IMG/VR virus record: IMGVR_UViG_3300022921_000002
Location: 157,448 to 221,447 of that record
Length of the DNA stretch: 64,000 nt
Direction: 5' to 3' (one strand)
The notes under the pieces were generated by a model. It was not told where the DNA came from and did not search any database. It saw nothing but the letters and a program-made list of their open reading frames with translations. This document shows, piece after piece, positions 1,029-48,988 of the stretch (its first letter is position 1; the number at the start of each line of letters is the position of its first letter). The translations under genes and the position numbers were made by a program.

Positions 1029-1037
1029 AGGTATCTT

Positions 1038-15497: not shown

Positions 15498-16694
15498 ATG
15501 GAATATATGAAATTTTTTAAAGACACGGTTGCATCATTTAGAAGCGACGGAAGATATCGAGTATTTAATGATATTATCCGTGAAAAGGGTCAGTTTCCTA
15601 GGGCTATTTGGTATGGGAAATATGCACCAAAGAATATTGTTAATTGGTGCTCAAATGATTATTTGGGTATGGGTCAAAACCAATATGTCATAGATGCTAT
15701 GCATACTGCATTAGATCAAACAGGTTCAGGTTCCGGCGGTACGAGAAATATCGGCGGAACCTCAGTTTTCCATGTAACACTTGAACGTGAAATTGCAACA
15801 CTACACCAACGTGAAAACGCATTACTGTTTAGTAGTGCATACGTTGCCAATGAGTGGGCTCTAATTGCTCTTTCACGCATCATCCCAAACATTTGCTTTA
15901 TATCTGATAATAAAAACCATGCCTCAATCATTATGGGAGTAAAGCACAGCCGTGCACCTAAAATGATTTTTAAGCATAATGATATGGCAGATCTCGAGAA
16001 ATGTTTAAAGGCAGCAAAAAAGAATAAGCAAATTCCTTGCGTATTGTTTGAGTCCGTATATTCAATGGACGGTGATGTTGCGCCTATTAAAGAAATCGTT
16101 GAGTTATCACATAAATATAACGCAATGACTTATATAGATGAAGTCCATGCGGTTGGTTTGTATGGTCCTACAGGTGCAGGTTATTGTGAACATTTAAATT
16201 TATATTCCGATGATATTGATATTATCAACGGCACGTTAGGAAAAGCATATGGGGTACAAGGCGGGTATATTTCAGGTAAGCAAGAAGTTATTGATGCGAT
16301 TAGATTGGTTGCATCAGGGTTCATATTCACCACCTCCATGTCACCTGTTATATGTGCTGGGGCACTCGCCAGTATAAAATATCTCAAAGACCATTCTTGT
16401 CTAAGAGATCAACAACAAGAACGAGTAAAAAAGCTCAGACAAATGTTAGAAGAAGCAGGATTGAATATACATCCTAATGCTTGTACTCACATTATCCCAG
16501 TAATGATTAATGATGCCTTTAAATGTAAAGAAGCATCGGATAGATTACTAAACGAATTCGGTATATACATTCAACCGATTAATTCACCAACAGTAGAGGC
16601 AGGTACCGAAAGGTTACGTATTGCTCCTACACCATACCATACCGATTTGATGATGGTGGAATTAGTCGAAGCGCTGAAAGAAGTATTGAAATGA
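15498..16694 (+). CDS. hemA: 5-aminolevulinate synthase (PLP-dependent, Shemin pathway)
   Basis: [52 protein letters not shown] (PLP Lys), [20 protein letters not shown]. Confidence 0.92.
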
Positions 16695-17371: not shown

Positions 17372-18394
17372 ATGAAGCGAATACTAATCACTGGTGGCGG
17401 TGGATTTATTGCTCACCATTTAATTAACCAGGTACTTATCCGAACAGACTGGGAAATTGTAACACTTGATCGGTTAGATTACAGTGGCAATCTCAATCGA
17501 CTCCATGATTTACTTCAGGACCGAACTCCTGCCGAACGTAAACGTGTACGGACAATCTTCCATGATTTAAAAGCAGAAATCAACCCAATGCTTGAAGCAG
17601 ACATTGGTAAGGTTGATATTATTGCTCACCTTGCCGCAGGTTCCCACGTTGACCGTTCAATCGAGCGTCCTATGGAATTTGTCATGGACAATGTAGTGGG
17701 TACAGCTAATCTTTTAGATTATGGCCGTAGGCAGGATAACCTTGAAAGGTTCTTATACTTTTCAACTGATGAAGTATTCGGCCCTGCACCTGATGGTATT
17801 AAGTATGACGAGTACGACCGTTATAATTGTACTAATCCTTACTCAGCATCTAAAGCTGGTGCTGAGGAATTGGCTGTTGCATACCAAAATACTTATAATA
17901 TGCCAATCTATATTACGCATACTATGAACGTATTTGGACAACGGCAACATCCTGAAAAGTTTATTCCAATGACTATTAGGAATGTTCGAGATGGCGGTAT
18001 GGTAACTATTCACAGTGATGAAACAAAAACAATTCCAGGATCACGCCATTACATCCATGCTGAAGATGTAGCTGATGCAACAATGTTCTTATTGGAACAC
18101 AACCGCACATTGGATATGACAAACAACACAGGAATTAAATGCCCTAAGTTTAATATCTGTGGTGCTACGGAATTAAACAATTTGGAACTTGCACAGCTTA
18201 TCGCTGATTCCCAAGGAAAGGAATTGAATTATCAATTTATGGATTTCCACAGTAGCCGTCCTGGTCACGATCTTCGATATGCACTCAGCGGTGATAGAAT
18301 GGCGAATATGGGATGGACACCTCAACCTGTTGAGAAAAGACTTGATGAAGTAGTACATTGGACATTAGAAAATAAAAGGTGGCTTGACATATGA
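17372..18394 (+). CDS. NDP-sugar 4,6-dehydratase (RmlB-like extended SDR)
   Basis: ITGGGGFIA, HLAAGSHVDRSI, STDEVFG, YSASKA, RPGHDLRY. Confidence 0.9.
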   Translation: MKRILITGGGGFIAHHLINQVLIRTDWEIVTLDRLDYSGNLNRLHDLLQDRTPAERKRVRTIFHDLKAEINPMLEADIGKVDIIAHLAAGSHVDRSIERPMEFVMDNVVGTANLLDYGRRQDNLERFLYFSTDEVFGPAPDGIKYDEYDRYNCTNPYSASKAGAEELAVAYQNTYNMPIYITHTMNVFGQRQHPEKFIPMTIRNVRDGGMVTIHSDETKTIPGSRHYIHAEDVADATMFLLEHNRTLDMTNNTGIKCPKFNICGATELNNLELAQLIADSQGKELNYQFMDFHSSRPGHDLRYALSGDRMANMGWTPQPVEKRLDEVVHWTLENKRWLDI

Positions 18395-18954
18395 ATTGGG
18401 AAACATTTATAGAACAGAACTATGAGCATGCTTGCAATACAAAAACTGATATTGATGAGCATCTGCCAATCCTAAGAGCATTAGGTGACCAATGCGACCA
18501 TATTACAGAAATGGGTGTTAGGTTTGGTGCAAGTTCAAAAGCATTCTTATGCTGTGACGTAACACTTATTTCATATGATATTGAATATAACGAACAAGTA
18601 AATAGATTATTTGAAATTGCAAAAGATGCTGGTAAATCGGTTGAGTACATTATTCAAGATGTTCTCAAAACAGAAATTGTACCAACTGACTTGTTGTTTA
18701 TTGATACATGGCACTCAAACGAGCAATTGAGACAAGAACTTGCATTGCACGGAAATCAAGCACAGAAATTTCTAGTGTTCCATGATACACAAACTTATGG
18801 TCTTCAAGATGAAAGTTGGAATAAGATTAAACCGAGTGAACCGGGGTGTGGTTTGTTACCTGCCATTATTGATTTTATAATTGAAAATCCGCATTGGCAA
18901 TTCCATACACACCGAACAAATTGTAATGGACTGACTGTATTAGAGAGAAGATAA
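18391..18954 (+). CDS. Class I SAM-dependent methyltransferase-like protein
   Basis: TEMGVRFGAS, DLLFIDTWH, LVFHDT. Confidence 0.65.
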   Translation: MNWETFIEQNYEHACNTKTDIDEHLPILRALGDQCDHITEMGVRFGASSKAFLCCDVTLISYDIEYNEQVNRLFEIAKDAGKSVEYIIQDVLKTEIVPTDLLFIDTWHSNEQLRQELALHGNQAQKFLVFHDTQTYGLQDESWNKIKPSEPGCGLLPAIIDFIIENPHWQFHTHRTNCNGLTVLERR

Positions 18955-20501
18955 TGATTGTAGATTGCTTTCCGTTTTTTGCACCGACAAATGAAGAAAT
19001 ACTATATTTAAGAGTTAACCTACTCAAAGATGTTGTTGATAAATTTATTATTGTTGAAAGTAACAAAACTCATAGTGGTGAACCTGTTGAGCGTCGGTTC
19101 CTTGAGATTGCTCGTAATCAAGGTTTGCCGATGGAAAAGATCATTTATATTGAGCATGATATTCCTGAAACTGAAGATTTAAAAACATTAGCAATTGATA
19201 GAGTAAACGCAGGTACTAATAAAAATAATATTGATTCATTATATGCAAGAGTACGTGAGCGTTTACAAAAAGATGCTTGTATCAATGCTTTTAATCAATT
19301 TAATGATGATGACGTTTTTATCTATGGTGATGCCGATGAGATTATCAATCCTCAGCATGTGGAATGGTTAGCAAACCTGTGCCGCGCCAATACATCCGTG
19401 ATTTTAAAAATACCTCTTGTTTATTTACAAGGTCGTGCAGATCTGCGTGTCCATCACCGCAATGGTCAACCGCTTATTTGGATGCGTGCTATGTTCTTTG
19501 CAACAAAGGGACAGATATGGAAAAATGGTGGTTTTAATAATATTCGTTGTGGTAATATGCAGGATGATGTTAGATTTCCTATTCAAGATGGTAAAGTCAT
19601 ACAGGATCTTGGGTGGCATTTGGCATGGATGGGAACAAACGACCAACGTAATAAAAAAGCACGTTCATTTGCTCATGCCTTTGATAAATTCCAATGGATG
19701 AAGAAACAAGATGATTTTGTGAACGGTGGATACGAAAAACATTTCAATAGCAATGATCCAGTTGAAGGTGGTATTGCACCTGATGGAAATCCTGGGCATA
19801 TATTGAAAAGATATCCTCTCGATAAATTACCAAAAATGCTACTTGATACTCCATACCTTAGTAAATTCTTTTTACCTGAAGTTGATATAATGAAAGAGTT
19901 TACGTTTAATCACTGTGTTTGTTATTGGTGCCAAAAATTGGATTGGCCTTTGATGTATGATCTTGACGGCGATGGTAAAAAGACATGGTTTGAAATACCA
20001 CGGAGTTGTTCTGTCACAGTAAAAGAAAGTCATCCTAACCGCAAGCAAGTTAGCCAGGATGATCCTGAGTACAAAAATGCAAAAAAACCACTCATTATAT
20101 TTACAGAACCCGTTGAAAGGTTTTTGTCTTGTATGAACGTATATCTTGTACCAGGTCAACGGTATTACGATTATGGTAAAGATATTTTTAAATCATTTGA
20201 TGTTAATCTTGAAGATTGTACCAAACAAGAAAAGATTGATTATTTCTTTACACATTTAAATAAGGTGTGTTCTTATCATCAAGTACACCATTTCCATCCG
20301 CAAGTTAGATTTATTGATTTTGAAACATTTGATGAGTTTACGGTTATCAACAAACACGAAACAAGTAATTATCTTGGAACTGACCGTGTAATGAATAAAA
20401 CAACAAAAGAAATAAATGAAAGCGATTTAACCAAAGATCAACTTGACTTCATACGTTGGGTTTATCGAGAAGATTACGAGTTCTTTAAAAATTATGGCTA
20501 A
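18954..20501 (+). CDS. GT17-like glycosyltransferase fused to a C-terminal sulfotransferase-like domain
   Basis: IVDCFPFF, IVESNKTHSG, RERLQKD, GDADEI, GWHLAWMG (GT17); FEIPRSCSVT, EPVERFLS, HFHPQ, VYREDYEFF (Sulfotransfer_2-like). Confidence 0.7.
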   Translation: MIVDCFPFFAPTNEEILYLRVNLLKDVVDKFIIVESNKTHSGEPVERRFLEIARNQGLPMEKIIYIEHDIPETEDLKTLAIDRVNAGTNKNNIDSLYARVRERLQKDACINAFNQFNDDDVFIYGDADEIINPQHVEWLANLCRANTSVILKIPLVYLQGRADLRVHHRNGQPLIWMRAMFFATKGQIWKNGGFNNIRCGNMQDDVRFPIQDGKVIQDLGWHLAWMGTNDQRNKKARSFAHAFDKFQWMKKQDDFVNGGYEKHFNSNDPVEGGIAPDGNPGHILKRYPLDKLPKMLLDTPYLSKFFLPEVDIMKEFTFNHCVCYWCQKLDWPLMYDLDGDGKKTWFEIPRSCSVTVKESHPNRKQVSQDDPEYKNAKKPLIIFTEPVERFLSCMNVYLVPGQRYYDYGKDIFKSFDVNLEDCTKQEKIDYFFTHLNKVCSYHQVHHFHPQVRFIDFETFDEFTVINKHETSNYLGTDRVMNKTTKEINESDLTKDQLDFIRWVYREDYEFFKNYG

Positions 20502-22288: not shown

Positions 22289-23056
22289 ATGAAAATTTTG
22301 ATATGCGGCCATGGTTTCGTTGGTAAGGCTCACGGGTTATTTTTATCATCACACCATGATATTAAAGTGTATGATCCACAATTGGGTTATAAAGATACTA
22401 CAGTATTTAATGATGCTGACGCAGTTATTATTGCCGTTTCCACTCCCGAAGGTGAAGATGGTCAATGCGATATGTCAAATGTGTATGACACAATCGAGCG
22501 CATTATGCCAGGAACACCTGTTCTTATAAAATCAACGGTCAGTCTTGAAGGTTGGCGGTTGATTAACCGTGCCTATCCAAATGAATTTATTACCTTTTCT
22601 CCCGAATACCTCCGAGCAGATTATGCTATGGAAGATTTTAAAAATCAAAAAAGTATAGCTGTAGGTGGCGGTGATGTTAATTTATGGGTTGGTATATTAT
22701 CAGAATCATTAGAAATACGTGTTGATATTATGAACCCCGAGGTACTTATTTTAAACAAGTATTTTAGAAATGCGTTTTTGGCAATGAAAGTTGCCTTCTT
22801 TGAACAGATGTATGATATGGCGATTACGTCAGGTGTTGATCCGCACGAATTATTGGCAACTGTTTCAGATGATAAACGTATTGGTAAAAGTCATACATAT
22901 ATTAATACAAATGACCGAGGTTTCGGTGGTCATTGTTTCCCAAAAGATACATCAGCTTTATTGGCAACAGGCCATCAAATGGGTTACGACTTGTCCATCT
23001 TATCCGAGGCAATGCAATACAATGAAAGGTTGCGAAATGAGAAAAATAATATATGA
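22289..23056 (+). CDS. UDP-glucose/GDP-mannose dehydrogenase family protein (short form)
   Basis: GHGFVG, AVSTP, IKSTV, FSPEYLR, KYFRNAFLAMKV, GFGGHCFPKD. Confidence 0.85.
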   Translation: MKILICGHGFVGKAHGLFLSSHHDIKVYDPQLGYKDTTVFNDADAVIIAVSTPEGEDGQCDMSNVYDTIERIMPGTPVLIKSTVSLEGWRLINRAYPNEFITFSPEYLRADYAMEDFKNQKSIAVGGGDVNLWVGILSESLEIRVDIMNPEVLILNKYFRNAFLAMKVAFFEQMYDMAITSGVDPHELLATVSDDKRIGKSHTYINTNDRGFGGHCFPKDTSALLATGHQMGYDLSILSEAMQYNERLRNEKNNI

Positions 23057-23246
23057 CAATATCTGCGAAGTCGTAAGTACACGGACCGATGTTATAGTTG
23101 AAGCTGAAGCCGATAATATGAGACCAGGAGTTTCATTTGAAGCATATGTAGCAAACAATAAAATTAAAATGAAATGGAACGGCAAGATTTACGTTGGTAA
23201 TGTGTCAGGTATGGAATTTACATCAACAGGACCTAAAGAACTATGA
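23037..23246 (+). CDS. Hypothetical protein
   Basis: AAAGG upstream; ends in ATGA overlap with the next gene. Confidence 0.5.
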   Translation: MRKIIYDNICEVVSTRTDVIVEAEADNMRPGVSFEAYVANNKIKMKWNGKIYVGNVSGMEFTSTGPKEL

Positions 23247-23650
23247 AGGTGGGGTTTACTGCATCGGCATTTGATTTACTCCACGCAGGACACGTTCAAA
23301 TGTTAAGAGATGCAAGAGAACAATGTGACTTTTTGATATGCGGATTGCAAATTGATCCGACATTAGACCGAGCCGATAAGAATGCTCCTGTGCAAAATAT
23401 AGTTGAAAGATATACACAATTAAAAGCAATTAGTTACGTTGATGAGATCATTCCGTATTTGACAGAATCAGATCTTTGTGATATATTATCAATGTACCAC
23501 ATAGATGTTCGTATTCTAGGTGTTGAGTACAAAGAAAAAGATTTCACAGGTAAAGACATATGCCGCAAACGTGGCATTGATTTATATTTTAATAAACGAG
23601 ATCACCGTTTTAGTACAAGTGATTTAAGAAGGAGAGTTTGTAATGACTGA
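23243..23650 (+). CDS. Cytidylyltransferase (TagD / glycerol-3-phosphate cytidylyltransferase-like)
   Basis: SAFDLLHAGHV, YVDEIIPY, RDHRFSTSDLR. Confidence 0.85.
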   Translation: MKVGFTASAFDLLHAGHVQMLRDAREQCDFLICGLQIDPTLDRADKNAPVQNIVERYTQLKAISYVDEIIPYLTESDLCDILSMYHIDVRILGVEYKEKDFTGKDICRKRGIDLYFNKRDHRFSTSDLRRRVCND

Positions 23651-23822
23651 TGGACCATTTAAAGCGGCATTTGATGCAGATACTACCGGCGTAGTGCATC
23701 GTGAGATTATAACCTATCGTATGAAGAACGGTATGATGGTAAAAGAAACCGCATGCCGTGATTACTATAAATCTGGTGATTACCATGATAGCATATCAAC
23801 ACAACCGTTGGTGCAACGATGA
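23643..23822 (+). CDS. Hypothetical small protein (59 aa)
   Basis: Manually translated MTDGPFKAAFDAD...QPLVQR; AGGAG RBS; fills the gap. Confidence 0.5.
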   Translation: MTDGPFKAAFDADTTGVVHREIITYRMKNGMMVKETACRDYYKSGDYHDSISTQPLVQR

Positions 23823-24001
23823 GTGATGAGCAATGGCAAATAGATTCTGATATGCTGATTCAACTTCATAATACCGCAAGGATTATGGAACAATCCGATA
23901 ATACGGCAGGTAATGAACTCCGACAAATTGCCGACCGTTTTAGTACACTAATTAAAAATGCACATAGTCGAAGACATTGGTGCAATGGGAATGAGAAATA
24001 A
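23819..24001 (+). CDS. Hypothetical protein
   Basis: ATGA-coupled ORF. Confidence 0.45.
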   Translation: MSDEQWQIDSDMLIQLHNTARIMEQSDNTAGNELRQIADRFSTLIKNAHSRRHWCNGNEK

Positions 24002-24166
24002 TGTTTAAATTGTTTAAATCTAATACAGACGCAGAAATTGATTTTGGGCAAGATGTATCAATGGTACCACAGATTGAAATAGTACCTGAGCCATCATTAT
24101 CAGATATGCTCAAATTGGTTGAAGAACGTCTTGACCGTATTGAAAGTAAAATTGACAAACTACTCA

Positions 24167-25537
24167 ATGAGTAAGGTTTGGTTAGGTATAAGTGAAGGCT
24201 TCCATGATGCCGGTGTAAGTATGATTTGGAACGGGCAAATATTGTCGGCAACTCATGCTGAACGGTTTAGTCGTAAAAAGAATGACCGTTGGGTTCATCC
24301 TATGCAGTATCCGCAAGGTATTAATAACGGATATGATAAGATTGCTTTTTATGAAAAACCTTGGTTGAAAACAACGCGTCAGCTATGGGCAGGTCAAGGT
24401 TTAAAACCAAAACGTACTAAATACAACAAGTCATTCCATCACCATGAGTCTCATGCTGCCGCAGGGTTTTATACTTCAAAGTTTGATTCCTGTAATATTT
24501 TAGTTATTGATGCAATTGGTGAATGGGATACTGTTTCCGTTTGGAAAGCATGGACGAAGAACGGTATACCAAAAATGATTAAATTAAAATCATATAAGTA
24601 TCCGTTTTCAGTGGGTTTGTTTTATTCAGCAATTACTAAATCAATTAAATTGAAGCCACAGGAAGATGAATATATTACCATGGGTATGGCAGCATACGGC
24701 GAGCCAATTTATACCGATGAGCTCAAAGAAATAATGCTACACAAAAATTGCCATAAAGGAATAGCGCAATTTCAATATGCAAAAGATGAAGATATTGCGG
24801 CATCAGCACAAAAGGTTGTTGAAGATTTCATTATTGAAATGGTAAAAGATTATTGCCCACACGAAAACCTGATTATGATGGGTGGTGTGGCATTGAATTG
24901 TGTTGCGAATACAAAGGTTGCTGAACTTGGTAAAAACATTTGGATTATGCCAAATCCTGGTGATTGTGGATCTTCATTAGGTGCTGCGGCACTAGGTTAT
25001 GGAAAGAAATTGATATGGGAAGATCCATATCTTGGAACGGAGATTAAAAATGAAGTACAAATTAGTGGCGTTGTTCAGCATCTTATTGATAATTCCTATT
25101 GCGGTATTGCGAATGGCCGCGCTGAGTTTGGCCCTCGTGCCCTTGGCAATCGTAGCCTTATCGCTGACCCTCGACGAGATGTTAAAGATACCGTTAACGA
25201 AATTAAACGTAGACAAAAATTTCGACCCTTTGCACCTGCGATCCTGGAAGAATTTGCTAATGAATATTTCCAAGGACCAATGAATGAGTATATGCAATTT
25301 GTGGCGCAAGCCAAACACGACTATAAATCTGTAACCCACGTTGATGGTTCAGCACGTGTTCAAATTGTAAAACCAAACTGTAAATCTATATTACGCCCAA
25401 TACTTGAGGAATGGTATGAAAAGACAGGTTGTCCAATGTTATTGAATACGAGTTTAAATATTAAAGGTCAACCGATGGTTGATACTTGGGAACACGCATT
25501 AGAATTTGAAAAGAAATATAATGTTAAAGTCTTCTAA
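24167..25537 (+). CDS. O-carbamoyltransferase (NodU/CmcH/TobZ family)
   Basis: GFHDAG, ERFSRKKND, HHESHAAAG, IDAIGE, EYITMGMAAYG, GGVALNCVAN, EFGPRALGNRS, RPFAP, HVDGSARVQ, LLNTSLN. Confidence 0.92.
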   Translation: MSKVWLGISEGFHDAGVSMIWNGQILSATHAERFSRKKNDRWVHPMQYPQGINNGYDKIAFYEKPWLKTTRQLWAGQGLKPKRTKYNKSFHHHESHAAAGFYTSKFDSCNILVIDAIGEWDTVSVWKAWTKNGIPKMIKLKSYKYPFSVGLFYSAITKSIKLKPQEDEYITMGMAAYGEPIYTDELKEIMLHKNCHKGIAQFQYAKDEDIAASAQKVVEDFIIEMVKDYCPHENLIMMGGVALNCVANTKVAELGKNIWIMPNPGDCGSSLGAAALGYGKKLIWEDPYLGTEIKNEVQISGVVQHLIDNSYCGIANGRAEFGPRALGNRSLIADPRRDVKDTVNEIKRRQKFRPFAPAILEEFANEYFQGPMNEYMQFVAQAKHDYKSVTHVDGSARVQIVKPNCKSILRPILEEWYEKTGCPMLLNTSLNIKGQPMVDTWEHALEFEKKYNVKVF

Positions 25538-26372
25538 ATATATTCTTGCAACAGGCTGCAGTTATACGGATTTAGAATATCGTTCTCCTCATTATGACAT
25601 TAAACCATGGCCTATGTGGCCTGAACTTGTTGGTGACTATTTAAGTTTGCCTGTTAAAAATATTGCAAAGTGCGGTGCAGGAAATGATTTTATGTTGGAT
25701 CAACTTATTCCTATAATTGCAAAAGATCATATGAATATTGATTGCGTTATGATACAATGGTCGGCAATAGACCGATGGTCAGTTTATAGTGATGATATAT
25801 TTTTAAATAACCCAAAATCTGATATTCAAAATGAGAATACACAAGATCCTCATAAGTTGGTTAGTAAAGAACGGGCAGGATATTATGAGCGTTTAGAATA
25901 TTCAAAATATTTAATGAAAAGAATTAATGCTAAAGGAACTATAACACTTGTACAGTTATTCTTTCAGCAATGTTTGACTATTGAAAGATTATGCCGTGCG
26001 CTTGGGATCAAATGCGTACACCTACAAGCATGTGGTCATATAGGTTTAAGTTATGTAAACTCTGCATTAAAAATAATGGGTGAAAAATTTACTTCACACG
26101 AGCAACATATGGAATGGATGAAACAAGTAAGTTCATTACCTGAATACAAAGAATTGTATAATGAAAAAACTACAATGATTAACTTTCCCAAAACAAGTTC
26201 TATTCCTTTAGTAAAAGTATCGGATGATCCAATATATTGGTCAGTACAGCACTTGTTTAATTCAAACCGAGATAAATATCGCATCGGACCATTAGATAGT
26301 CATCCTTCTGAAGATGGTCAGAATTTGATGGCTGAAATGTTTTACTTGAAATATAATGAGGTTTATGGATAA
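25521..26372 (+). CDS. SGNH/GDSL hydrolase-like protein, paralogue 1
   Basis: LATGCSYT, WP, NIAKCGAGND, DSHP. Confidence 0.6.
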   Translation: MLKSSKYILATGCSYTDLEYRSPHYDIKPWPMWPELVGDYLSLPVKNIAKCGAGNDFMLDQLIPIIAKDHMNIDCVMIQWSAIDRWSVYSDDIFLNNPKSDIQNENTQDPHKLVSKERAGYYERLEYSKYLMKRINAKGTITLVQLFFQQCLTIERLCRALGIKCVHLQACGHIGLSYVNSALKIMGEKFTSHEQHMEWMKQVSSLPEYKELYNEKTTMINFPKTSSIPLVKVSDDPIYWSVQHLFNSNRDKYRIGPLDSHPSEDGQNLMAEMFYLKYNEVYG

Positions 26373-27193
26373 TGCTACTTGCTGCTGGTTGTAGTTATAC
26401 TGACGAAAATTTTACCTCGGTACTTCATCCTGAATATGATACTTCATATAAAAAATGGCCTGAGATAGTTGCTGATAAACTTGGTGTAATGCATAAGAAC
26501 CTAGGTGCCTGTGGTGCAGGTAATGATTATATCACAAAGCAACTGACAATGGAAATACTTAAAAATCATAAAAACATTACTGCCGTTATGGTTGGATGGA
26601 CTGAAATACATCGCTTTACTATCTTTGACTTTTATCGCTGTAATCCGTTCGCAACTGTTGCAAACCATAAAGTACCTTCTATGAAAACATATAAAAAATT
26701 TGAAACTTCTCAGGAAGAACGGGCATTGTTACCGTTCTATGATCTATTATATAGTTATGGTTTATTTGACAAACCAAGCAACGGTGGTAATACTCAAAAC
26801 CTTTTCGTTTATATGGTGAGGCAACTTTTAGATGGTATGTTTCAAATACAGGAATTATGCTCTACCTTTAATATACCTTACATCGGTGGACAGCTATGCG
26901 GATATACTGACCGTGAAAAGTGGCACACGTTGTCAAAAATATATGGCGACATTCCATTTTCAGAATCAGCATGGACAAGTATGTTTGGTGAATTAGAAGA
27001 ACTGTGGAGACTTAAACCAAACAGCCATATTGGATATCCGTTTATGAAAACACTAGGTGGTTATAGTATTAATAGTTTATTAACATACGACCAAGGACAT
27101 AAGGTTTCAGAGATAGACTCTCATCCAAATGAAAAAGGTCACCAATTTATAGCGGATTTATACTATGACAAATATAGAAAAACTTATTCTTAA
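26372..27193 (+). CDS. SGNH/GDSL hydrolase-like protein, paralogue 2
   Basis: LAAGCSYT, WP, NLGACGAGND, DSHP. Confidence 0.6.
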   Translation: MLLAAGCSYTDENFTSVLHPEYDTSYKKWPEIVADKLGVMHKNLGACGAGNDYITKQLTMEILKNHKNITAVMVGWTEIHRFTIFDFYRCNPFATVANHKVPSMKTYKKFETSQEERALLPFYDLLYSYGLFDKPSNGGNTQNLFVYMVRQLLDGMFQIQELCSTFNIPYIGGQLCGYTDREKWHTLSKIYGDIPFSESAWTSMFGELEELWRLKPNSHIGYPFMKTLGGYSINSLLTYDQGHKVSEIDSHPNEKGHQFIADLYYDKYRKTYS

Positions 27194-27293
27194 ATTAAAA
27201 TTTAAATGGTTGTATTTTAAACTACGATTTAAAAAAGATGTAATCAAAGATGAAGATGTAGACATTTACATATACGAGGCTGACGATGATTAG
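27165..27293 (+). CDS. Hypothetical 42-aa protein
   Basis: Manually translated MTNIEKLILKLKFKWLYFKLRFKK...IYIYEADDD; fills the gap. Confidence 0.35.
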   Translation: MTNIEKLILKLKFKWLYFKLRFKKDVIKDEDVDIYIYEADDD

Positions 27294-27993
27294 ATATATT
27301 TTTGACGTTGATGGTACACTAACACCGAGTCGTCAAAAGATGGACCGTAAGTTTAAAAAGTTCTTTTTGAAATTTATGGAAACTCATAAGGTGTGGATTG
27401 TAACAGGATCGGACTATGCCAAAACAAAGGAACAACTAGGTGCTGATATTACCGAAAATGTTGTTACTTGTTATAATTGTTCTGGCAACGAAACAAGGCA
27501 TAGAGGACAAATTGTAAACGCATCAACCTGGGAATTACCTGATGAAGTACGAGCATTTCTCAACCTTCAGTTGACTATTTCAGAATTTGTTTTGAGAACA
27601 GGTAATCACATTGAAGAACGGCGAGGTTGTGTTAACTTTAGTGTCGTTGGTAGAAATGCCACACTCGGTGAACGTAAACTCTATATTGAATATGATAAGA
27701 AAACAAATGAAAGACGCAATCTTGCCAATAACTTTAATTATGTTTTTGGATCAGAATCAATGGGTCTTCATGCCGTGATTGGCGGTGATACTGGATTAGA
27801 CATATATCCTATCGGTAAAGATAAATCACAAATACTTCAAGATTTTAATGCTGATGATGATATACAGTTCTTTGGTGATAAAATGGATATCGGAGGTAAT
27901 GATTATCCTTTAGCACGTGTTAATAAGGCAGGAACAAATCATCACGTTAAAGATTGGCGTGAAACTTGGGAGATACTAAAATGTTTACCATAG
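27286..27993 (+). CDS. HAD-IIB phosphomannomutase-like protein
   Basis: FDVDGTLTPSRQ, VTGSD, IEERRGCVNFSVVGRNA, FFGDKMDIGGNDY. Confidence 0.8.
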   Translation: MIRYIFDVDGTLTPSRQKMDRKFKKFFLKFMETHKVWIVTGSDYAKTKEQLGADITENVVTCYNCSGNETRHRGQIVNASTWELPDEVRAFLNLQLTISEFVLRTGNHIEERRGCVNFSVVGRNATLGERKLYIEYDKKTNERRNLANNFNYVFGSESMGLHAVIGGDTGLDIYPIGKDKSQILQDFNADDDIQFFGDKMDIGGNDYPLARVNKAGTNHHVKDWRETWEILKCLP

Positions 27994-29462: not shown

Positions 29463-29586
29463 ACTTATTTATGGAACAGCAATAGCATTTGCTCTGGTAC
29501 TATCTAGTTGGTATCTGATCCACATTTGGTCGGATTGTCTTAATGAAAATTCAGTATTTACCTGTATGAGGATGTTAAGTAAATGA
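29455..29586 (+). CDS. Small membrane protein
   Basis: GAGG RBS; single hydrophobic helix. Confidence 0.45.
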   Translation: MTKLIYGTAIAFALVLSSWYLIHIWSDCLNENSVFTCMRMLSK

Positions 29587-30704: not shown

Positions 30705-30731
30705 CATAAATAACTCTATCAAAGGAGTTAT
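30705..30731 (+). promoter_or_regulatory. Late promoter overlapping an RBS-sequestering hairpin
   Basis: CATAAATA 30705-30712; stem ATAACTCT (30710-17) pairs with GGAGTTAT (30724-31), which contains the SD. Confidence 0.6.
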
Positions 30732-30734
30732 ATT

Positions 30735-32560: not shown

Positions 32561-33520
32561 ATGAGCTGTATCTATAAAGGTGTGGTTGAGGAGTCTGAAC
32601 TATCAGGTAAATCCAAAGGTGGTACTGAAATGATGAGAGCACGCCTTATGGACGGAGTAGATCCTGCACTGTTGCAGGAATATGCTATCCACTTGTCACG
32701 TCCGCGTGATATGAAAGGTGATGTTAAAAATATCCTATGGTGCCATGATCTTGCCGAGGATCCTGAAAACAAAATTCTAAAAGAAAAAGGTTGGAATAAT
32801 TTTGACCATATTGTTTTCGTTTCACAATGGCAACGAGATCAGTATATCACTTATTATGGTATACCGCACTCAATGTGCTCGGTAATTCCTAATGCTATTG
32901 AAAAGGATTACAAACCTTCGGAAGAAAAAGATTATGAAACTATTCGTTTTGTATATCATACAACTCCGCACCGTGGTTTGGAATTACTTATTCCTATCTT
33001 TGAACAATTAGCAAAAGAATTTGATAACATCCATCTTGATGTGTTTTCGTCATTTGGTATATATGGTTGGGGTCATAGAGATGAACCTTACCAACCGTTG
33101 TTTGATAAAATTGAAGCACATCCTAAGATGACTTATCATGGATCGGTAAATAACCGTCTTGTATTGGATACATTGGATAAATCTCATATTTTCCTATATC
33201 CAAATACATGGAAAGAAACATCTTGCATCTCGTTAATTGAGGCAATCAAATCAGGTTTGGTTTGTATTCACCCCAACCTTGGCGCACTTACTGAAACCGC
33301 AAGCGGTGCAACAATTTCTTATGATTTCCATGAGAATGCCACACAACATGCGAACGTAGCATATTCTGTCGCAAAAGGTGTACTTAATATGCAACAATCC
33401 GATCCTGACTTTATTCGCCGTTTCACAACAAGTGATAGGTTCAATTTAGCCAGAAATAATATAAATACTTTTACAACAACATGGACACAGCTCCTACGAG
33501 CATTGGCAGTAAATGACTGA
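32561..33520 (+). CDS. GT-B glycosyltransferase (GT4-like)
   Basis: GGTE, LWCHD, FVSQWQ, VIPNAI, PHRGL, ETSCISLIEA. Confidence 0.8.
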   Translation: MSCIYKGVVEESELSGKSKGGTEMMRARLMDGVDPALLQEYAIHLSRPRDMKGDVKNILWCHDLAEDPENKILKEKGWNNFDHIVFVSQWQRDQYITYYGIPHSMCSVIPNAIEKDYKPSEEKDYETIRFVYHTTPHRGLELLIPIFEQLAKEFDNIHLDVFSSFGIYGWGHRDEPYQPLFDKIEAHPKMTYHGSVNNRLVLDTLDKSHIFLYPNTWKETSCISLIEAIKSGLVCIHPNLGALTETASGATISYDFHENATQHANVAYSVAKGVLNMQQSDPDFIRRFTTSDRFNLARNNINTFTTTWTQLLRALAVND

Positions 33521-47797: not shown

Positions 47798-48166
47798 ATG
47801 AATTACTCATTATTATTTTCAGTTTGCCATCTTGTAAGTATTTCAATGTATTCTTATTTGCAAGATGAACGTTATTTAATTATCGCAGGCGCAATGCTTG
47901 TTTGGTCACTTTTTAATTTTATCAAAGTTGGTGCGTTAGTTCTATCACCACAATTTGAAATATCTCTCGATTTGAATGAAGATATTCCTTTATCTTATAA
48001 GTATTTGCTAATCTGTGCATCAGCATTATCAGCATACGCAATATGGTCTATAGGCTATAGTTTTTTCGCAGGGTTTTCTGCCGTTTATATTATAACTGTA
48101 TTTGTATCTTTAACTATCCAACTATTTGATATTGATATGACAACTACAGATGAGGATGAAGAATGA
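47798..48166 (+). CDS. Hypothetical membrane protein
   Basis: About four hydrophobic segments; AGGAG RBS. Confidence 0.6.
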   Translation: MNYSLLFSVCHLVSISMYSYLQDERYLIIAGAMLVWSLFNFIKVGALVLSPQFEISLDLNEDIPLSYKYLLICASALSAYAIWSIGYSFFAGFSAVYIITVFVSLTIQLFDIDMTTTDEDEE

Positions 48167-48588
48167 AGATTTTAATATTTGGCTTGCCGGGTTCAGGTAA
48201 AACCTGGCTTGCCGAACGACTACAAAAGCGTTTGAATTGCGCTTGGTTCAATGCCGATAAAATCCGTGAAATGGCAAACGACTGGGAATTCAGTGAAGCT
48301 GCTCGTTTACGCCAAGCTTATCGCATGAAAGGTATTGCTGATTACGAAAAAGAAATGAGACGAATGGTTATCTGTGATTTCGTTTGTCCACTTGAAGAAA
48401 CAAGAGAAATCTTTGATGCCGATTATACCGTATGGATGGATACTATCCAAGAAGGTCGATTTGGTGATACTAATAAAATGTTTCAAAAACCTTCAGAGGT
48501 TAATTACCATGTAGAAAAATGGTTTGATAACACAGATGAAGGTTTAGCAGATGCTATTGAAAGACATATAAGGATTAATAATGTTTGA
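48163..48588 (+). CDS. Adenylyl-sulfate (APS) kinase-like P-loop kinase
   Basis: GLPGSGKT, FNADKIR, FSEAARLRQ, ICDFVCP, FQKP. Confidence 0.65.
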   Translation: MKILIFGLPGSGKTWLAERLQKRLNCAWFNADKIREMANDWEFSEAARLRQAYRMKGIADYEKEMRRMVICDFVCPLEETREIFDADYTVWMDTIQEGRFGDTNKMFQKPSEVNYHVEKWFDNTDEGLADAIERHIRINNV

Positions 48589-48988
48589 TTACAAGAAACC
48601 AACAGTACAGATGCTAGGTCGATGGCAACCTTGGCATGATGGTCACACCGAACTATTTAAACGTGCTCATTCAATCACAGGTCAAGTTGTTATTATGGTC
48701 CGTGACGTATTTAACTTTGACGGTGATGCAGGTGCAGGTCGTACCGCAACACAAGATGATAATCCTTTTGGTATTATTGACGTTATTAATAATATTGAAG
48801 CAGGTCTTAGACTACACGGATTTGAAAATGGTTATGAGTATTTGATTTTAGAAGTACCTAACATTGTTGATATTAGTTACGGTCGTGGTGTTGGATATAC
48901 ATTTACCGAACACGATTTGGGTAAAGACATCCATGACATATCAGCAACAAAAATTCGTCAACAAATGCGAAAAGAAGGAAAACTCTAA
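48581..48988 (+). CDS. HxGH nucleotidyltransferase (cytidylyltransferase-like)
   Basis: LGRWQPWHDGH, DNPF, ISATKIR. Confidence 0.7.
   Translation: MFDYKKPTVQMLGRWQPWHDGHTELFKRAHSITGQVVIMVRDVFNFDGDAGAGRTATQDDNPFGIIDVINNIEAGLRLHGFENGYEYLILEVPNIVDISYGRGVGYTFTEHDLGKDIHDISATKIRQQMRKEGKL

What the first reader, a model, noticed from the sequence alone, without database searches (positions are those of the whole stretch)
18954..20501. GT17-sulfotransferase fusion plus a candidate PAPS supply: phage-made sulfated glycan
Seen: a GT17-like domain joined through a HCVCYWC linker to a sulfotransferase-like domain. At 48163-48988 an APS-kinase-like gene overlaps an HxGH nucleotidyltransferase ending ISATKIR, reminiscent of ATP sulfurylase/NMNAT C-termini. 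The window also has RmlB-, UGD-, TagD-, PMM- and PMI-like enzymes, a methyltransferase, GT25 and GT4. Inference: the phage may build a sulfated, decorated glycan on its virion, its DNA or the host surface. The PAPS-binding loop is divergent (IPRSCS), so activity is uncertain.
Basis: partly seen in the sequence, partly recalled or inferred. Interest (0 to 1): 0.6.

Follow-up and report, generated by a model that had tools for sequence, protein, structure and literature searches.

The report
Phage glycosyltransferase-sulfotransferase fusion gene
A marine T4-like phage joins a sugar-adding enzyme to a divergent sulfate-adding enzyme in one gene, and also carries three ordinary sulfotransferase genes and an APS-kinase-like gene, so it probably sulfates a sugar-bearing molecule during infection, which has not been shown for any phage.

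Summary
ORF 18954-20501 (515 aa) is a real, conserved fusion: about 78 full-length relatives and 72 IMG/VR loci. Its N-terminal part passes Pfam's GT17 cut-off.

Its C-terminal 200 aa match no family directly. They fold with pLDDT 92 into a sulfotransferase fold: the 15 best PDB matches are all PAPS sulfotransferases (Z up to 7.0). A profile search ties the domain to a viral family in which 54 of 86 members hit Pfam Sulfotransfer_2.

"HCVCYWC" is not a linker. It is that family's own N-terminal CxCxxC motif.

Two canonical PAPS-contact residues are replaced in this clade, and the replacements are invariant there: the 5'-PSB Lys is Arg and the 3'-PB Arg is Thr. Activity and donor therefore remain open.

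The genome also has three canonical Sulfotransfer_2 genes beside GT genes.

The 48-kb kinase belongs to the APS-kinase family (hhalign with E. coli CysC 97.7%) but lacks the lid. In phiRSL1-type jumbo phages its homologue sits 1-5 kb from a sulfotransferase.

The partner nucleotidyltransferase is NMNAT-like by sequence. Its fold is equally close to NMNAT and ATP sulfurylase, so APS synthesis is unproven. No canonical ATP sulfurylase is encoded.

Verdict: partly supported; a new variant of known kinds.

The parts
17372..18394 (+). RmlB-like NDP-sugar 4,6-dehydratase (SDR). It is the first gene of the coupled trio: its stop overlaps the next start as ATGA.
   Evidence: Pfam Epimerase 159 bits and GDP_Man_Dehyd 158 bits. 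NCBIfam dTDP-glucose 4,6-dehydratase 239 bits, below the equivalog cut-off of 365. Junction sequence. Present in 61 of 72 related loci.
18391..18954 (+). Probable class I SAM methyltransferase (CmcI / rhamnosyl O-methyltransferase-like). Weak assignment.
   Evidence: Pfam RMNT_CmcI E 0.017 and Methyltransf_24 E 0.056, both below cut-off. ESM-Atlas neighbours at 0.97 carry PF04989 or PF13578. Present in 59 of 72 loci. TAATG overlap with the next gene.
18954..19880 (+). GT17-like glycosyltransferase domain of the fusion (residues 1 to about 309), with a DxD motif in YGDADEII (residues 124-131, nt 19323-19346).
   Evidence: Pfam PF04724 33.2 bits against a cut-off of 26. Homologues carry PF04724. 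D126, D128 and E129 are invariant in 42 sequences.
19911..19931 (+). HCVCYWC, the CxCxxC motif at the N-terminus of the sulfotransferase-like domain. It is not a linker.
   Evidence: C321, C323 and C326 are invariant in the fusion clade. Each Cys is present in 58-59 of 74 canonical stand-alone family members (table).
19899..20498 (+). Divergent Sulfotransfer_2-like domain (residues about 316-515).
   Evidence: AF2 pLDDT 92.2. VIA-align: the top 15 are all PAPS sulfotransferases; HS2ST 3f5f Z 7.0, rmsd 3.7, 151 aligned. Foldseek's top rows are almost all sulfotransferases but weak. A profile search finds 112 cluster representatives, and 54 of the 86 members scanned hit PF03567.
19986..20027 (+). 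5'-PSB-like strand-loop-helix WFEIPRSCSVTVKE. Arg350 sits where the family has Lys.
   Evidence: Model: strand 35-38, loop, helix 44-50. The family consensus is IPKNGS, with K required at this position in the 74 canonical members. R350 is invariant in the clade.
20100..20144 (+). 3'-PB-like strand-turn-helix FTEPVERFLSCMNVY. Thr384 sits where the family has the RDP Arg. Arg389 and Ser392 are kept.
   Evidence: The family consensus is RDPxxRFxS, with R required at this position in the 74 canonical members. The clade has T, S or A there. Model: strand 71-74 and helix 77-89.
20277..20303 (+). HQVHHFHPQ, the family-wide HHFxPQ motif and candidate catalytic His.
   Evidence: H445, H446, P449 and Q450 are invariant. 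Among canonical members the His equivalent to H446 is in 73 of 74 and the Gln equivalent to Q450 in 73 of 74. The catalytic role is inferred.
48163..48588 (+). APS-kinase-family P-loop kinase (141 aa) that lacks the lid segment.
   Evidence: Pfam APS_kinase 30.9 bits against a cut-off of 21.1. The family profile against PDB puts about 22 APS kinases on top (2yvu E 3.9e-13); apart from two giant multi-kinase-domain proteins (AK9, CFAP276), other kinase types appear only from about E 3e-5. hhalign with E. coli CysC: 97.7%, E 2e-12, 115 columns, lid deleted. With NadR only the P-loop aligns.
48581..48988 (+). HxGH (HIGH-type) nucleotidyltransferase, 135 aa, with motifs GRWQPWHDGH, YGRGVGY and ISATKIR. 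It is translationally coupled to the kinase.
   Evidence: Profile against PDB: archaeal NMNAT and NadM only (1f9a E 9.5e-6), no ATP sulfurylase. Model pLDDT 69.9. VIA Z: NadM 6.4, T. thermophilus ATP sulfurylase 6.2, PAPSS1 sulfurylase domain 5.8, PPAT 5.9, which are tied. The kinase is directly upstream in 83 of 85 loci. The two are fused in Xylella phage Sano and Stenotrophomonas phage DLP_6.
2..1028 (+). End of a Caps_synth (GT32-like) gene plus a GT25 gene. Both lie downstream of two canonical Sulfotransfer_2 genes just outside the window (genome 155673-157027).
   Evidence: Pfam PF03567 54.7 and 33.0 bits (cut-off 22), Caps_synth 135 bits, GT25 46 bits.
22289..27993 (+). Further sugar-nucleotide genes of the conserved block: truncated UGD-like ORF, cytidylyl/adenylyltransferase, carbamoyltransferase and PMM.
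   Evidence: Pfam and NCBIfam. Synteny in 54-57 of 72 loci; carbamoyltransferase in 20.
32561..33520 (+). GT4/GT1-type glycosyltransferase.
   Evidence: Pfam Glycos_transf_1 39 bits and Glyco_transf_4 31 bits.

Best explanation
The 515-aa protein is a cytoplasmic two-domain enzyme of a marine T4-like phage.

Shown:
- An N-terminal GT17-family glycosyltransferase domain with an intact DxD motif is fused to a C-terminal domain with the PAPS-sulfotransferase fold.
- That C-terminal domain descends from a viral Sulfotransfer_2 family of roughly 200-aa proteins that carry CxCxxC ... IPKNGS ... RDPxxRFxS ... HHFxPQ.
- The gene is translationally coupled to an RmlB-like dehydratase and a probable methyltransferase, in a gene block conserved across this phage clade.
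- The same genome has three canonical Sulfotransfer_2 genes and an APS-kinase-family kinase.

Inferred:
- The GT17 domain transfers a sugar onto an intracellular acceptor: a lipid-linked or nucleotide-linked glycan precursor, or a phage protein.
- The fused domain then sulfates that sugar or its neighbour. The fusion channels the product from one domain to the other.
- The sulfate donor PAPS is topped up by the phage kinase, which phosphorylates host-made APS. This would matter in hosts that reduce APS directly and keep little PAPS.
- The clade-specific Lys-to-Arg and Arg-to-Thr changes retune nucleotide binding rather than abolish it.
For: - Architecture and conservation.
- Fold: pLDDT 92.2. 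The 15 best of 48,161 PDB cluster representatives are all PAPS sulfotransferases, and P-loop kinases follow only at Z of 4 or less.
- Homology through intermediates: 112 representatives, and 54 of the 86 scanned hit PF03567, best E 1e-14.
- The PSB-like and 3'PB-like motifs sit on strand-loop-helix elements in the right order.
- Purifying selection: R350, S353, K357, R389, S392, H445, H446 and Q450 are invariant in 42 sequences at 54-70% identity.
- Lys and Arg interchange at the PSB position in four family members that keep the RDP Arg.
- The sulfotransferase-like gene stays in the same slot even where GT17, the methyltransferase and RmlB are missing (L054, L068, L069).
- There are three canonical Sulfotransfer_2 genes in the genome, two of them next to GT32-like and GT25 genes.
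- The kinase is APS-kinase family along almost its whole length, with the P-loop and, in the hhalign alignment with CysC, D32, R35, F43, R48, Q51, FVCP and R81 at conserved CysC positions.
- In phiRSL1 and two relatives at 59-61% identity, the kinase homologue lies 1.1-5.3 kb upstream of a sulfotransferase on the same strand, among glycosyltransferases.
- Stenotrophomonas phage DLP_6 and a complete 194.6-kb relative have both genes.
Against: - No direct Pfam, PHROG, NCBIfam or PDB-sequence match for the C-domain.
- Z 7.0 lies in the range the tool warns can be a common arrangement.
- The Arg that canonical sulfotransferases use for the 3'-phosphate of PAPS is Thr here, and the PSB Lys is Arg.
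- The kinase lacks the APS-kinase lid and scores far below the NCBIfam equivalog cut-offs: 22-26 bits against 127-163.
- The kinase family is far more widespread (4,786 hits) than the fusion (184 hits).
- The kinase also occurs in Xylella phage Sano and Ralstonia phage RsoM2USA, which have no Sulfotransfer_1, _2 or _3 match.
- Sulfotransferase-bearing Synechococcus phage ACG-2014f gave no kinase hit.
- Co-occurrence within the T4-like clade reflects shared ancestry.
- No acceptor, product or activity is known.
Confidence: 0.5

Rival explanations
1. The fused C-terminal domain keeps the sulfotransferase fold but no longer works as a PAPS-dependent sulfotransferase. It could use a donor without a 3'-phosphate (APS or another adenylate), catalyse another group transfer, or serve only as a nucleotide- or glycan-binding module for the GT17 domain.
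For: Both hallmark PAPS contacts are replaced, and the replacements are fixed in the clade: K to R at the PSB and R to T, S or A at the RDP position. The loss of the Arg is limited to this clade and its nearest stand-alone relatives (P0136, P0137, P0139, P0142, P0146). The genome already has three canonical sulfotransferases, so the fused copy is free to diverge. There is no direct family hit.
Against: The rest of the family's invariant set is kept (P349, S353, K357, P386, R389, F390, S392, H445/H446, Q450, N481, Y504, D507), which is unexpected for a mere binding module. From my own knowledge and not tested here, an Arg in the PSB loop is the natural state of tyrosylprotein sulfotransferases (PRSGTT). 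Lys and Arg interchange elsewhere in this family.
Confidence: 0.25
2. The 48-kb kinase and nucleotidyltransferase pair is not a PAPS supply. It is a two-step nucleotide-cofactor pathway, for example NAD+ rebuilding in the manner of NadR/NARP3, or synthesis of another 3'-phospho-adenylyl compound as in CoA synthesis. It is unrelated to the fusion 29 kb away.
For: By sequence, the nucleotidyltransferase's only solved relatives are NMNATs (NCBIfam best hit NMNAT). A phage kinase-plus-NMNAT enzyme that rebuilds NAD+ has been demonstrated (NARP3, PMC13464706). The pair is fused in Sano-type phages that lack any sulfotransferase. It sits beside the capsid genes, not beside glycan genes. It is far more widespread than the fusion.
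Against: The kinase aligns with CysC over 115 columns at 97.7% but with the NadR kinase domain only at the P-loop (44.6%, 40 columns). No NAMPT is encoded. There is no PnuC-like transporter: the upstream 122-aa membrane ORF has no Pfam match and is detectable in only 24 of 85 loci. The domain order, kinase then nucleotidyltransferase, is that of animal PAPS synthase and the reverse of NadR (own knowledge). In phiRSL1-type phages the kinase neighbours a sulfotransferase.
Confidence: 0.35
3. The glycosyl- and sulfo-transferases act on the phage's own DNA, as hypermodification of hydroxymethyl-pyrimidine, rather than on a glycan or protein.
For: Besides ThyX, the genome has a 232-aa ThyA-family ORF (PF00303, 49 bits). 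It carries Asp where thymidylate synthases have the base-reading Asn, as in T4 dCMP hydroxymethylase (the residue reading is my own knowledge). It lies about 3 kb from the third sulfotransferase. In phiRSL1 the sulfotransferase, glycosyltransferases annotated as HMC-glucosyltransferases, and the kinase lie next to a thymidylate-synthase homologue.
Against: GT17, GT25, GT32-like, RmlB, PMM, UGD and carbamoyltransferase genes are typical of polysaccharide and LPS pathways. No DNA-binding feature was seen in the fusion. The fusion's neighbours are not DNA-modification genes. The phiRSL1 annotations are untested.
Confidence: 0.08

Closest known systems
Sulfotransfer_2 (PF03567) carbohydrate sulfotransferases, e.g. 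heparan sulfate 2-O-sulfotransferase (3f5f), and NDST1
   Same: Same fold (Z 7.0, 151-154 residues aligned). Same order of elements: PSB loop, RDPxxRxxS-type helix, His motif. Relatives of the domain hit PF03567.
   Different: About 200 aa instead of about 250-300. It has an extra N-terminal CxCxxC. The PSB Lys is Arg and the first 3'PB Arg is Thr. There is no direct Pfam hit. It is cytoplasmic and phage-encoded.
Tyrosylprotein sulfotransferases (TPST1/2)
   Same: The PSB loop has Arg instead of Lys (PRSGTT against PRSCSV; own knowledge). The shared fold is weak (3ap3 Z 3.6).
   Different: TPSTs keep the 3'PB Arg, belong to Sulfotransfer_3-like sequences and act on protein tyrosines. No sequence relationship was detected here.
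GT17 / MGAT3 (GnT-III), beta-1,4-mannosyl-glycoprotein GlcNAc-transferase
   Same: The Pfam family is met above the cut-off. JGI names some homologues this way.
   Different: Only profile positions 86-197 of 348 match. It is a phage cytoplasmic protein without a membrane anchor. Donor and acceptor are unknown. The same GT17 module is elsewhere fused to DUF6445 (PF20043), or to PF01050, PF01467 or PF07883 domains.
Bifunctional glycan-modifying sulfotransferases such as NDST (N-deacetylase/N-sulfotransferase)
   Same: Two sequential sugar-modifying activities are joined in one chain, with the sulfotransferase at the C-terminus.
   Different: The partner domain here is a glycosyltransferase, not a deacetylase. 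I know of no described GT17-sulfotransferase fusion, and two literature searches found none.
APS kinase CysC and the APS-kinase domain of PAPS synthase
   Same: hhalign 97.7% over 115 columns with E. coli CysC. APS kinases fill the top of the PDB profile search. The P-loop and conserved CysC positions are kept.
   Different: 141 aa. The lid (RDPKGLYKKARAGELRN in CysC) is deleted. The first Asp of DGD is Asn. Scores are far below the equivalog cut-offs. It is paired or fused with an NMNAT-like nucleotidyltransferase instead of a Sat- or CysDN-type sulfurylase.
NadR / phage NARP3 enzyme Bas30_86 (PMC13464706)
   Same: A phage-encoded kinase together with an HxGH adenylyltransferase.
   Different: The kinase domain is not RNK-like. 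The domain order is reversed. There is no PnuC-like partner and no NAMPT.
Ralstonia phage phiRSL1 cluster ORF232-ORF238
   Same: A homologous kinase (42% identity) lies with a Sulfotransfer_2-like gene and glycosyltransferases. This is conserved in two relatives.
   Different: The phiRSL1 kinase has an unrelated C-terminal extension instead of the nucleotidyltransferase. Its sulfotransferase is stand-alone. The cluster is uncharacterised.

Membership tests
PAPS-dependent sulfotransferase superfamily / Pfam Sulfotransfer_2 (PF03567) | Sulfotransferase alpha/beta fold with a strand-loop-helix PSB element | tested here: met
   AF2 pLDDT 92.2. The top 15 VIA matches are all sulfotransferases, with Z 7.0-4.5. 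Foldseek's list is dominated by sulfotransferases, with E from 0.03 upwards.
PAPS-dependent sulfotransferase superfamily / Pfam Sulfotransfer_2 (PF03567) | Direct match to the family model above its cut-off | tested here: not met
   No Pfam hit for residues 251-515 or 301-515 at E up to 10. However, 54 of 86 profile-search relatives hit PF03567.
PAPS-dependent sulfotransferase superfamily / Pfam Sulfotransfer_2 (PF03567) | Lys in the 5'-phosphosulfate-binding loop | tested here: not met
   Arg350, invariant in the clade. The 74 members taken as canonical have Lys at this position.
PAPS-dependent sulfotransferase superfamily / Pfam Sulfotransfer_2 (PF03567) | 3'-phosphate-binding Arg ... Ser pair (RDPxxRxxS) | tested here: not met
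   The first Arg is Thr384. Arg389 and Ser392 are present.
PAPS-dependent sulfotransferase superfamily / Pfam Sulfotransfer_2 (PF03567) | Catalytic base (His or Glu) near the acceptor | tested here: inconclusive
   The HHFxPQ motif is conserved family-wide. Its role is inferred, and no residue-level superposition was available.
PAPS-dependent sulfotransferase superfamily / Pfam Sulfotransfer_2 (PF03567) | Sulfate transfer from PAPS | not testable with these tools
   Needs a biochemical assay.
Glycosyltransferase family 17 (PF04724) | Match to the family model above its cut-off | tested here: met
   33.2 bits against 26, residues 15-144.
Glycosyltransferase family 17 (PF04724) | Acidic metal-binding motif (DxD) | tested here: met
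   In GDADE, D126, D128 and E129 are invariant. The assignment as the catalytic DxD is inferred.
APS kinase (CysC; PF01583, TIGR00455) | Family-model match | tested here: inconclusive
   Pfam 30.9 bits against 21.1: met. NCBIfam models 22-26 bits against 127-163: not met. hhalign with CysC 97.7%.
APS kinase (CysC; PF01583, TIGR00455) | P-loop plus APS-site residues (DGDxxR, FS...R..N, ISP) | tested here: met
   GLPGSGKT, NADKIR, WEFSEAARLRQ and FVCP align with the CysC motifs. Differences are D to N at the first Asp and N to Q.
APS kinase (CysC; PF01583, TIGR00455) | Mobile lid over the active site | tested here: not met
   About 16-20 residues are deleted relative to CysC.
ATP sulfurylase (Sat, PF01747; or CysD, PF01507) | Sequence membership | tested here: not met
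   No PF01747 or PF01507 match in the whole genome. No sulfurylase in the nucleotidyltransferase profile search against PDB at E up to 10.
ATP sulfurylase (Sat, PF01747; or CysD, PF01507) | Catalytic-domain fold | tested here: inconclusive
   1v47 Z 6.2, PAPSS1 residues 406-571 Z 5.8, tied with NMNAT at 6.4 and PPAT at 5.9. The model pLDDT is only 69.9.
Archaeal/NadM-type NMNAT | GRxQPxHxGH and ISxTxIR motifs, and a family-model match | tested here: inconclusive
   Both motifs are present. PDB profile hits are NMNATs only, at E 9.5e-6. NCBIfam gives 22.9 bits against a cut-off of 127. The protein is 135 aa against 168-181 aa.
NadR-like / NARP3 | RNK-type kinase domain and PnuC-like transporter partner | tested here: not met
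   hhalign with E. coli NadR aligns only the P-loop. No transporter family was found upstream.

The most novel reading that the evidence does not exclude
The 135-aa NMNAT-like nucleotidyltransferase is a previously unrecognised minimal ATP sulfurylase. Together with the lid-less APS kinase, to which it is translationally coupled here and fused in Sano- and DLP_6-type phages in the kinase-then-transferase order of animal PAPS synthase, it would form a roughly 270-aa miniature PAPS synthase. Such an enzyme would be widespread in marine T4-like phages. It would feed a set of phage sulfotransferases, including a GT17-fused one with a rebuilt nucleotide pocket.
Probability: 0.2. Interest if true: 0.8.

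Novelty: new variant of a known kind. Interest (0 to 1): 0.55.

Why it matters
Sulfotransferase genes are repeatedly annotated in phage genomes, yet a 2023 study states that their biological function in phages "remains unclear" (PMC10580990). This locus makes the question testable in four ways:
- It defines a conserved viral sulfotransferase family, with 112 clusters at 50% identity.
- It shows one clade of that family welded to a glycosyltransferase inside a three-gene operon.
- It shows a single phage carrying four sulfotransferase-type domains plus an APS-kinase homologue.
- It points to an independent jumbo-phage lineage where the kinase and a sulfotransferase are neighbours.

If the enzymes work as proposed, phages would make sulfated glycoconjugates. 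Candidate roles are receptor masking, virion decoration, or modified precursors. Phages would also draw on host sulfur assimilation for PAPS. Both would bear on marine sulfur and carbon cycling and on phage-host recognition. The fixed Lys-to-Arg and Arg-to-Thr changes would also be a natural experiment in sulfotransferase cofactor binding.

Tried and rejected
- Direct family scans of the C-domain found nothing useful: Pfam at E up to 10, PHROGs and NCBIfam.
- A full-length profile against PDB sequences gave only noise.
- Megablast of the region against 50,697 phage records gave no match. tblastn found only the GT17 part, at 23% identity, in two records.
- Foldseek alone was weak for the sulfotransferase model (best E 0.03, TM about 0.24). 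The exhaustive VIA search was needed.
- I tried to decide between NMNAT and ATP sulfurylase for the small nucleotidyltransferase by folding it. The model was mediocre (pLDDT 69.9) and the matches were tied, so this did not settle the question.
- I considered a NARP3-like reading with the upstream 122-aa membrane ORF as transporter. It has no family match and is poorly conserved.
- Co-occurrence of the kinase with the fusion on long contigs (3 of 5) was rejected as evidence of linkage, because those phages share ancestry and synteny.
- phiRSL1 ORF238 was tested as a kinase-nucleotidyltransferase fusion. Its C-terminal part is unrelated to the nucleotidyltransferase.
- A PMI-like gene was looked for and not found among the scanned ORFs.
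- Complex prediction, read laying and the look-up of sequencing runs were not used. No alternative genetic code was needed.
- The large representative search was used once, because the word search and the family scans left the C-domain open.


Full report
**Setting.** The window is the last 64 kb of a 221,447-bp IMG/VR virus record that CheckV rates as complete. The major capsid protein is 64-67% identical to those of T4-like phages of Sinorhizobium, Stenotrophomonas, Synechococcus and OM43. This is therefore a marine T4-like myovirus with 37% G+C. Megablast finds no near relative among 50,697 phage records.

**The observation.** ORF 18954-20501 (+) encodes 515 aa. Residues 15-144 match Pfam Glyco_transf_17 at 33.2 bits against a cut-off of 26. 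The word search found 184 homologues. About 78 of them are full-length (510-535 aa, 53-98% identical), come from marine metagenomes, and sit on contigs of up to several hundred kb. In a 42-sequence alignment both halves are conserved, including a GDADE motif (D126, D128, E129) in the GT17 half. The fusion is therefore a real and selected architecture.

The GT17 module also occurs in other forms:
- alone, at about 318 aa;
- fused to DUF6445 (PF20043);
- fused to PF01050, PF01467 or PF07883 domains.

The C-terminal module also occurs alone, at 182-238 aa.

**The C-terminal domain.** It has no direct match in Pfam (E up to 10), PHROGs, NCBIfam or PDB sequences. With the homologues as alignment, AlphaFold2 gives a confident model: pLDDT 92.2, pTM 0.88.

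- Foldseek's list is almost entirely PAPS sulfotransferases, but with weak scores (best E 0.03).
- The exhaustive VIA-align search of 48,161 PDB cluster representatives puts 15 sulfotransferases in the first 15 places. The best are HS 2-O-sulfotransferase (Z 7.0, rmsd 3.7, 151 residues), NDST1 (Z 7.0), a bacterial sulfotransferase (6.8) and 3-OST-5 (6.7).
- P-loop kinases, the fold's parent class, start only at Z 4.0.
- Z 7 on its own falls in the range the tool calls "middling". The purity of the list is what carries weight.

Independent sequence evidence came from the one large profile search, which I used because everything cheaper had left the domain open.
- A profile of the window's domain plus 14 stand-alone relatives found 112 cluster representatives, mostly proteins of about 200 aa.
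- Of the 86 members scanned one by one, 54 match Pfam Sulfotransfer_2, with best E 1e-14.
- ESM-Atlas features point the same way: a viral 216-aa cluster in which 20% of members carry PF03567.

The domain is thus a divergent member of a viral Sulfotransfer_2 family.

**Anatomy of that family.** The motifs, in order, are:
- CxCxxC;
- W-x-E-I-P-K-N-G-S on strand-loop-helix, which is the 5'-phosphosulfate-binding element;
- R-D-P-x-x-R-F-x-S on strand-turn-helix, which is the 3'-phosphate-binding element;
- H-H-F-x-P-Q;
- N-x-S/T;
- Y-x-x-D-Y.

Two points follow.

Each Cys is present in 58-59 of the 74 canonical stand-alone members. It may form a metal or disulfide site, but that was not tested.

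Second, the window's clade differs at exactly the two textbook PAPS contacts. The loop Lys is Arg350, and the first Arg of RDP is Thr384 (Ser or Ala in relatives). The rest of the invariant set is kept. Both replacements are fixed across 42 sequences at 54-70% identity.

Lys-to-Arg exchange occurs in four other family members that keep RDP, and it is the normal state in tyrosylprotein sulfotransferases (own knowledge). The loss of the Arg is confined to this clade and its nearest relatives. The domain is under selection and probably active, but the nucleotide it binds, and how, is not settled.

**Genomic context.** The fusion is the third gene of a translationally coupled trio:
1. RmlB-like 4,6-dehydratase (ATGA overlap with the next gene);
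2. a probable CmcI-like methyltransferase (TAATG overlap);
3. the GT17::sulfotransferase fusion.

In 72 IMG/VR loci the surrounding order is conserved:
- ThyX, RNR, 5-aminolevulinate synthase and DUF454;
- RmlB, methyltransferase and the fusion;
- a small ORF and a SleB-like hydrolase;
- a UGD-like ORF, a cytidylyl/adenylyltransferase and, in some loci, a carbamoyltransferase;
- PMM and, further on, GT4.

In three loci the sulfotransferase-like gene stands alone in the same slot, without GT17. One of these also lacks RmlB and the methyltransferase (L054, L068, L069). The sulfotransferase-like module is therefore the most persistent element of the slot.

The protein has no evident signal peptide or membrane segment (read by eye, not tested), so its acceptor would be intracellular.

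**More sulfotransferases in the same phage.** A search of the whole genome with the family profile found three further genes. All pass Pfam's Sulfotransfer_2 cut-off of 22 bits, at 54.7, 33.0 and 24.6 bits, and all have canonical PK..G and R[DN]P..R..S motifs.
- Two lie immediately upstream of the window. They are followed by a Caps_synth/GT32-like gene, whose end is window 2-280, then GT25 (267-1028), then a 1087-aa protein with a cytidylyltransferase-like domain.
- The third lies at genome 90.4 kb, beside a GNAT and an Asp/Asn-hydroxylase-like gene.

A phage with four sulfotransferase-type domains next to glycosyltransferases makes sulfation of sugar-bearing molecules the most economical reading.

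**The 48-kb pair: the kinase.** The 141-aa kinase (48163-48588) passes Pfam APS_kinase, but on its own it matches several P-loop families about equally.

A 21-sequence family profile resolves this.
- Against PDB sequences, about 22 APS kinases and PAPS-synthase kinase domains fill the top of the list. The best is 2yvu at E 3.9e-13, and they run down to about 1e-6.
- Two giant multi-kinase-domain proteins (AK9, CFAP276) are interleaved among them.
- Other kinase types begin around E 3e-5.

hhalign against E. coli CysC gives 97.7% and E 2e-12 over 115 columns. The aligned motifs are the P-loop, NADKIR against DGDNVR, WEFS..AR..Q against LGFS..DR..N, FVCP against FISP, and the C-terminal F-x-x-x-x-x-x-F/Y-x-x-P. 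The CysC lid segment is deleted. Against E. coli NadR only the P-loop aligns, at 44.6% over 40 columns.

The kinase is therefore an APS-kinase-family enzyme without a lid, and not a NadR-type ribosylnicotinamide kinase. It scores far below the NCBIfam equivalog cut-offs.

**The 48-kb pair: the nucleotidyltransferase.** The 135-aa protein (48581-48988) overlaps the kinase gene by 8 nt. The kinase is directly upstream in 83 of 85 loci. The two are fused in Xylella phage Sano gp35 and in Stenotrophomonas phage DLP_6 (PHROG 10255).

- By sequence, its profile finds only archaeal NMNAT and NadM (1f9a E 9.5e-6) and no ATP sulfurylase.
- By fold, on a mediocre model (pLDDT 69.9), the matches are tied: NadM Z 6.4, T. 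thermophilus ATP sulfurylase Z 6.2, the PAPSS1 sulfurylase domain 5.8, PPAT 5.9 and cytidylyltransferases 5.5-5.9.
- The genome has no Sat-type or CysD-type sulfurylase and no NAMPT.

Its substrate therefore cannot be decided here.

**Is the kinase linked to sulfation?**

For a link:
- In Ralstonia jumbo phage phiRSL1, the homologous kinase (ORF238, annotated APS kinase) heads a same-strand cluster. The cluster holds three glycosyltransferases, two nucleotidyltransferases and ORF232, annotated Gal-3-O-sulfotransferase, which matches my family profile at E 3.7e-5.
- In two IMG/VR relatives whose kinases are only 59-61% identical, a sulfotransferase-like ORF again lies 1.1 and 5.3 kb downstream.
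- Phage DLP_6 and a complete 194.6-kb relative carry both genes.

Against a link:
- Sano and RsoM2USA have the kinase but no Sulfotransfer_1, _2 or _3 match.
- Synechococcus phage ACG-2014f has a sulfotransferase but gave no kinase hit.
- The kinase family (4,786 hits) and the nucleotidyltransferase (at least 600 IMG/VR stretches) are far commoner than the fusion.
- Co-occurrence inside the T4-like clade is confounded by ancestry.

A demonstrated phage pathway with a kinase plus an NMNAT enzyme exists: NARP3, a NadR-like enzyme with a PnuC-like transporter (PMC13464706). It is the main rival for the pair, but the kinase type, the domain order and the missing transporter do not fit it.

**Most likely mechanism.**

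Shown:
- a GT17 domain fused to a sulfotransferase-fold domain of Sulfotransfer_2 descent;
- operon coupling to a 4,6-dehydratase and a probable methyltransferase;
- three canonical sulfotransferases in the same genome;
- an APS-kinase-family kinase.

Inferred:
- The GT17 domain adds a sugar to an intracellular acceptor and the fused domain sulfates it.
- PAPS comes from host APS through the phage kinase.
- The target is a glycan precursor, a host envelope polysaccharide or a virion protein.

I give this about 0.5 overall. I give somewhat less, about 0.4, to the PAPS-supply part alone.

Less likely readings:
- The fused domain has changed its donor or its chemistry (0.25).
- The pair serves NAD+ or another cofactor pathway (0.35 for that part).
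- The target is hydroxymethylated DNA (0.08). This last idea is prompted by a dCMP-hydroxymethylase-like ThyA homologue about 3 kb from the third sulfotransferase, and by the thymidylate-synthase homologue in the phiRSL1 cluster.

**Novelty.** GT17 enzymes, Sulfotransfer_2 enzymes and APS kinases are known kinds, and phage sulfotransferase genes have been noted before with unknown function (PMC10580990). The following appear to be new:
- the fusion of the two activities;
- the definition of a CxCxxC-bearing viral sulfotransferase family;
- the fixed replacement of both PAPS-contact residues in the fused clade;
- the lid-less APS-kinase and NMNAT-like module.

I rate it a new variant of known kinds, with interest 0.55. 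The most novel reading not excluded is that the small nucleotidyltransferase is a new minimal ATP sulfurylase, which would make the pair a miniature PAPS synthase (probability about 0.2).

Noticed in passing
window 15498-16694 (+): A phage-encoded 5-aminolevulinate synthase. NCBIfam TIGR01821 scores 559 bits against a cut-off of 338.55. It is followed by a DUF454 membrane protein and is conserved in 50 of 72 related loci. This is a C4-pathway haem-precursor gene typical of Alphaproteobacteria, so it is a possible host clue and an auxiliary metabolic gene.
   Followed up: partly
genome G000:C1:155673-157727 (L083:1453-3507), running into window 2-280; also window 267-4301: A second sulfation/glycan cluster: two canonical Sulfotransfer_2 genes (224 and 226 aa), a Caps_synth/GT32-like gene, GT25, and a 1087-aa protein with CTP_transf_like and DUF5824 domains.
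   Followed up: partly
genome G000:C1:86819-87517 (-) (L168:1495-2193) and 90372-90986 (-) (L084:1339-1953): A 232-aa ThyA-family ORF (PF00303, 49 bits) has Asp at the position of the base-reading Asn, as in T4 dCMP hydroxymethylase. It occurs in a genome that also has ThyX. About 3 kb away lie a third sulfotransferase, a GNAT and an Asp/Asn-hydroxylase-like gene. This hints at modified cytosine in the DNA.
   Followed up: partly
Ralstonia phage phiRSL1 NC_010811.2 163104-171498 (L085); relatives L173, L174: A same-strand cluster: APS-kinase-like ORF238, three glycosyltransferases, two nucleotidyltransferases, a sulfotransferase (ORF232) and a thymidylate-synthase homologue (ORF230). The kinase-sulfotransferase proximity is kept in two diverged relatives.
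   Followed up: partly
homologues of the GT17 half (P0082, P0086-87, P0092-96, P0097, P0102, P0117): The same GT17 module is fused in other proteins to DUF6445 (PF20043), or to mannose-6-P-isomerase/cupin and cytidylyltransferase domains. This looks like a domain-swapping series around one glycosyltransferase.
   Followed up: no
window 22289-23056 (+) and 22791-23246 (+): The UGD-like ORF is only 255 aa. It matches profile positions 73-177 of the NAD-binding domain and the central domain, and it lacks the start of the Rossmann fold and the C-terminal domain. An overlapping 151-aa ORF in another frame has no family match. It may be a degenerate or remodelled dehydrogenase.
   Followed up: partly
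window 24119-25537 (+): A NodU/CmcH-type carbamoyltransferase (Carbam_trans_C 162 bits) is followed by two paralogous ORFs without family matches (25506-26372 and 26372-27193). It is present in about 20 of 72 related loci and suggests O-carbamoylated sugars.
   Followed up: no
window 47798-48166 (+): A 122-aa ORF, hydrophobic by eye and probably multi-pass membrane, is coupled by an ATGA overlap to the kinase. It has no Pfam match and is detectable in only 24 of 85 related loci, at 25-43% identity.
   Followed up: partly
window 29583-31157 (+): An ATP-dependent DNA ligase is followed by a SegE-like GIY-YIG homing endonuclease (131.6 bits).
   Followed up: no
window 38528-43789 (+): A 1753-aa ORF that I did not examine.
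   Followed up: no
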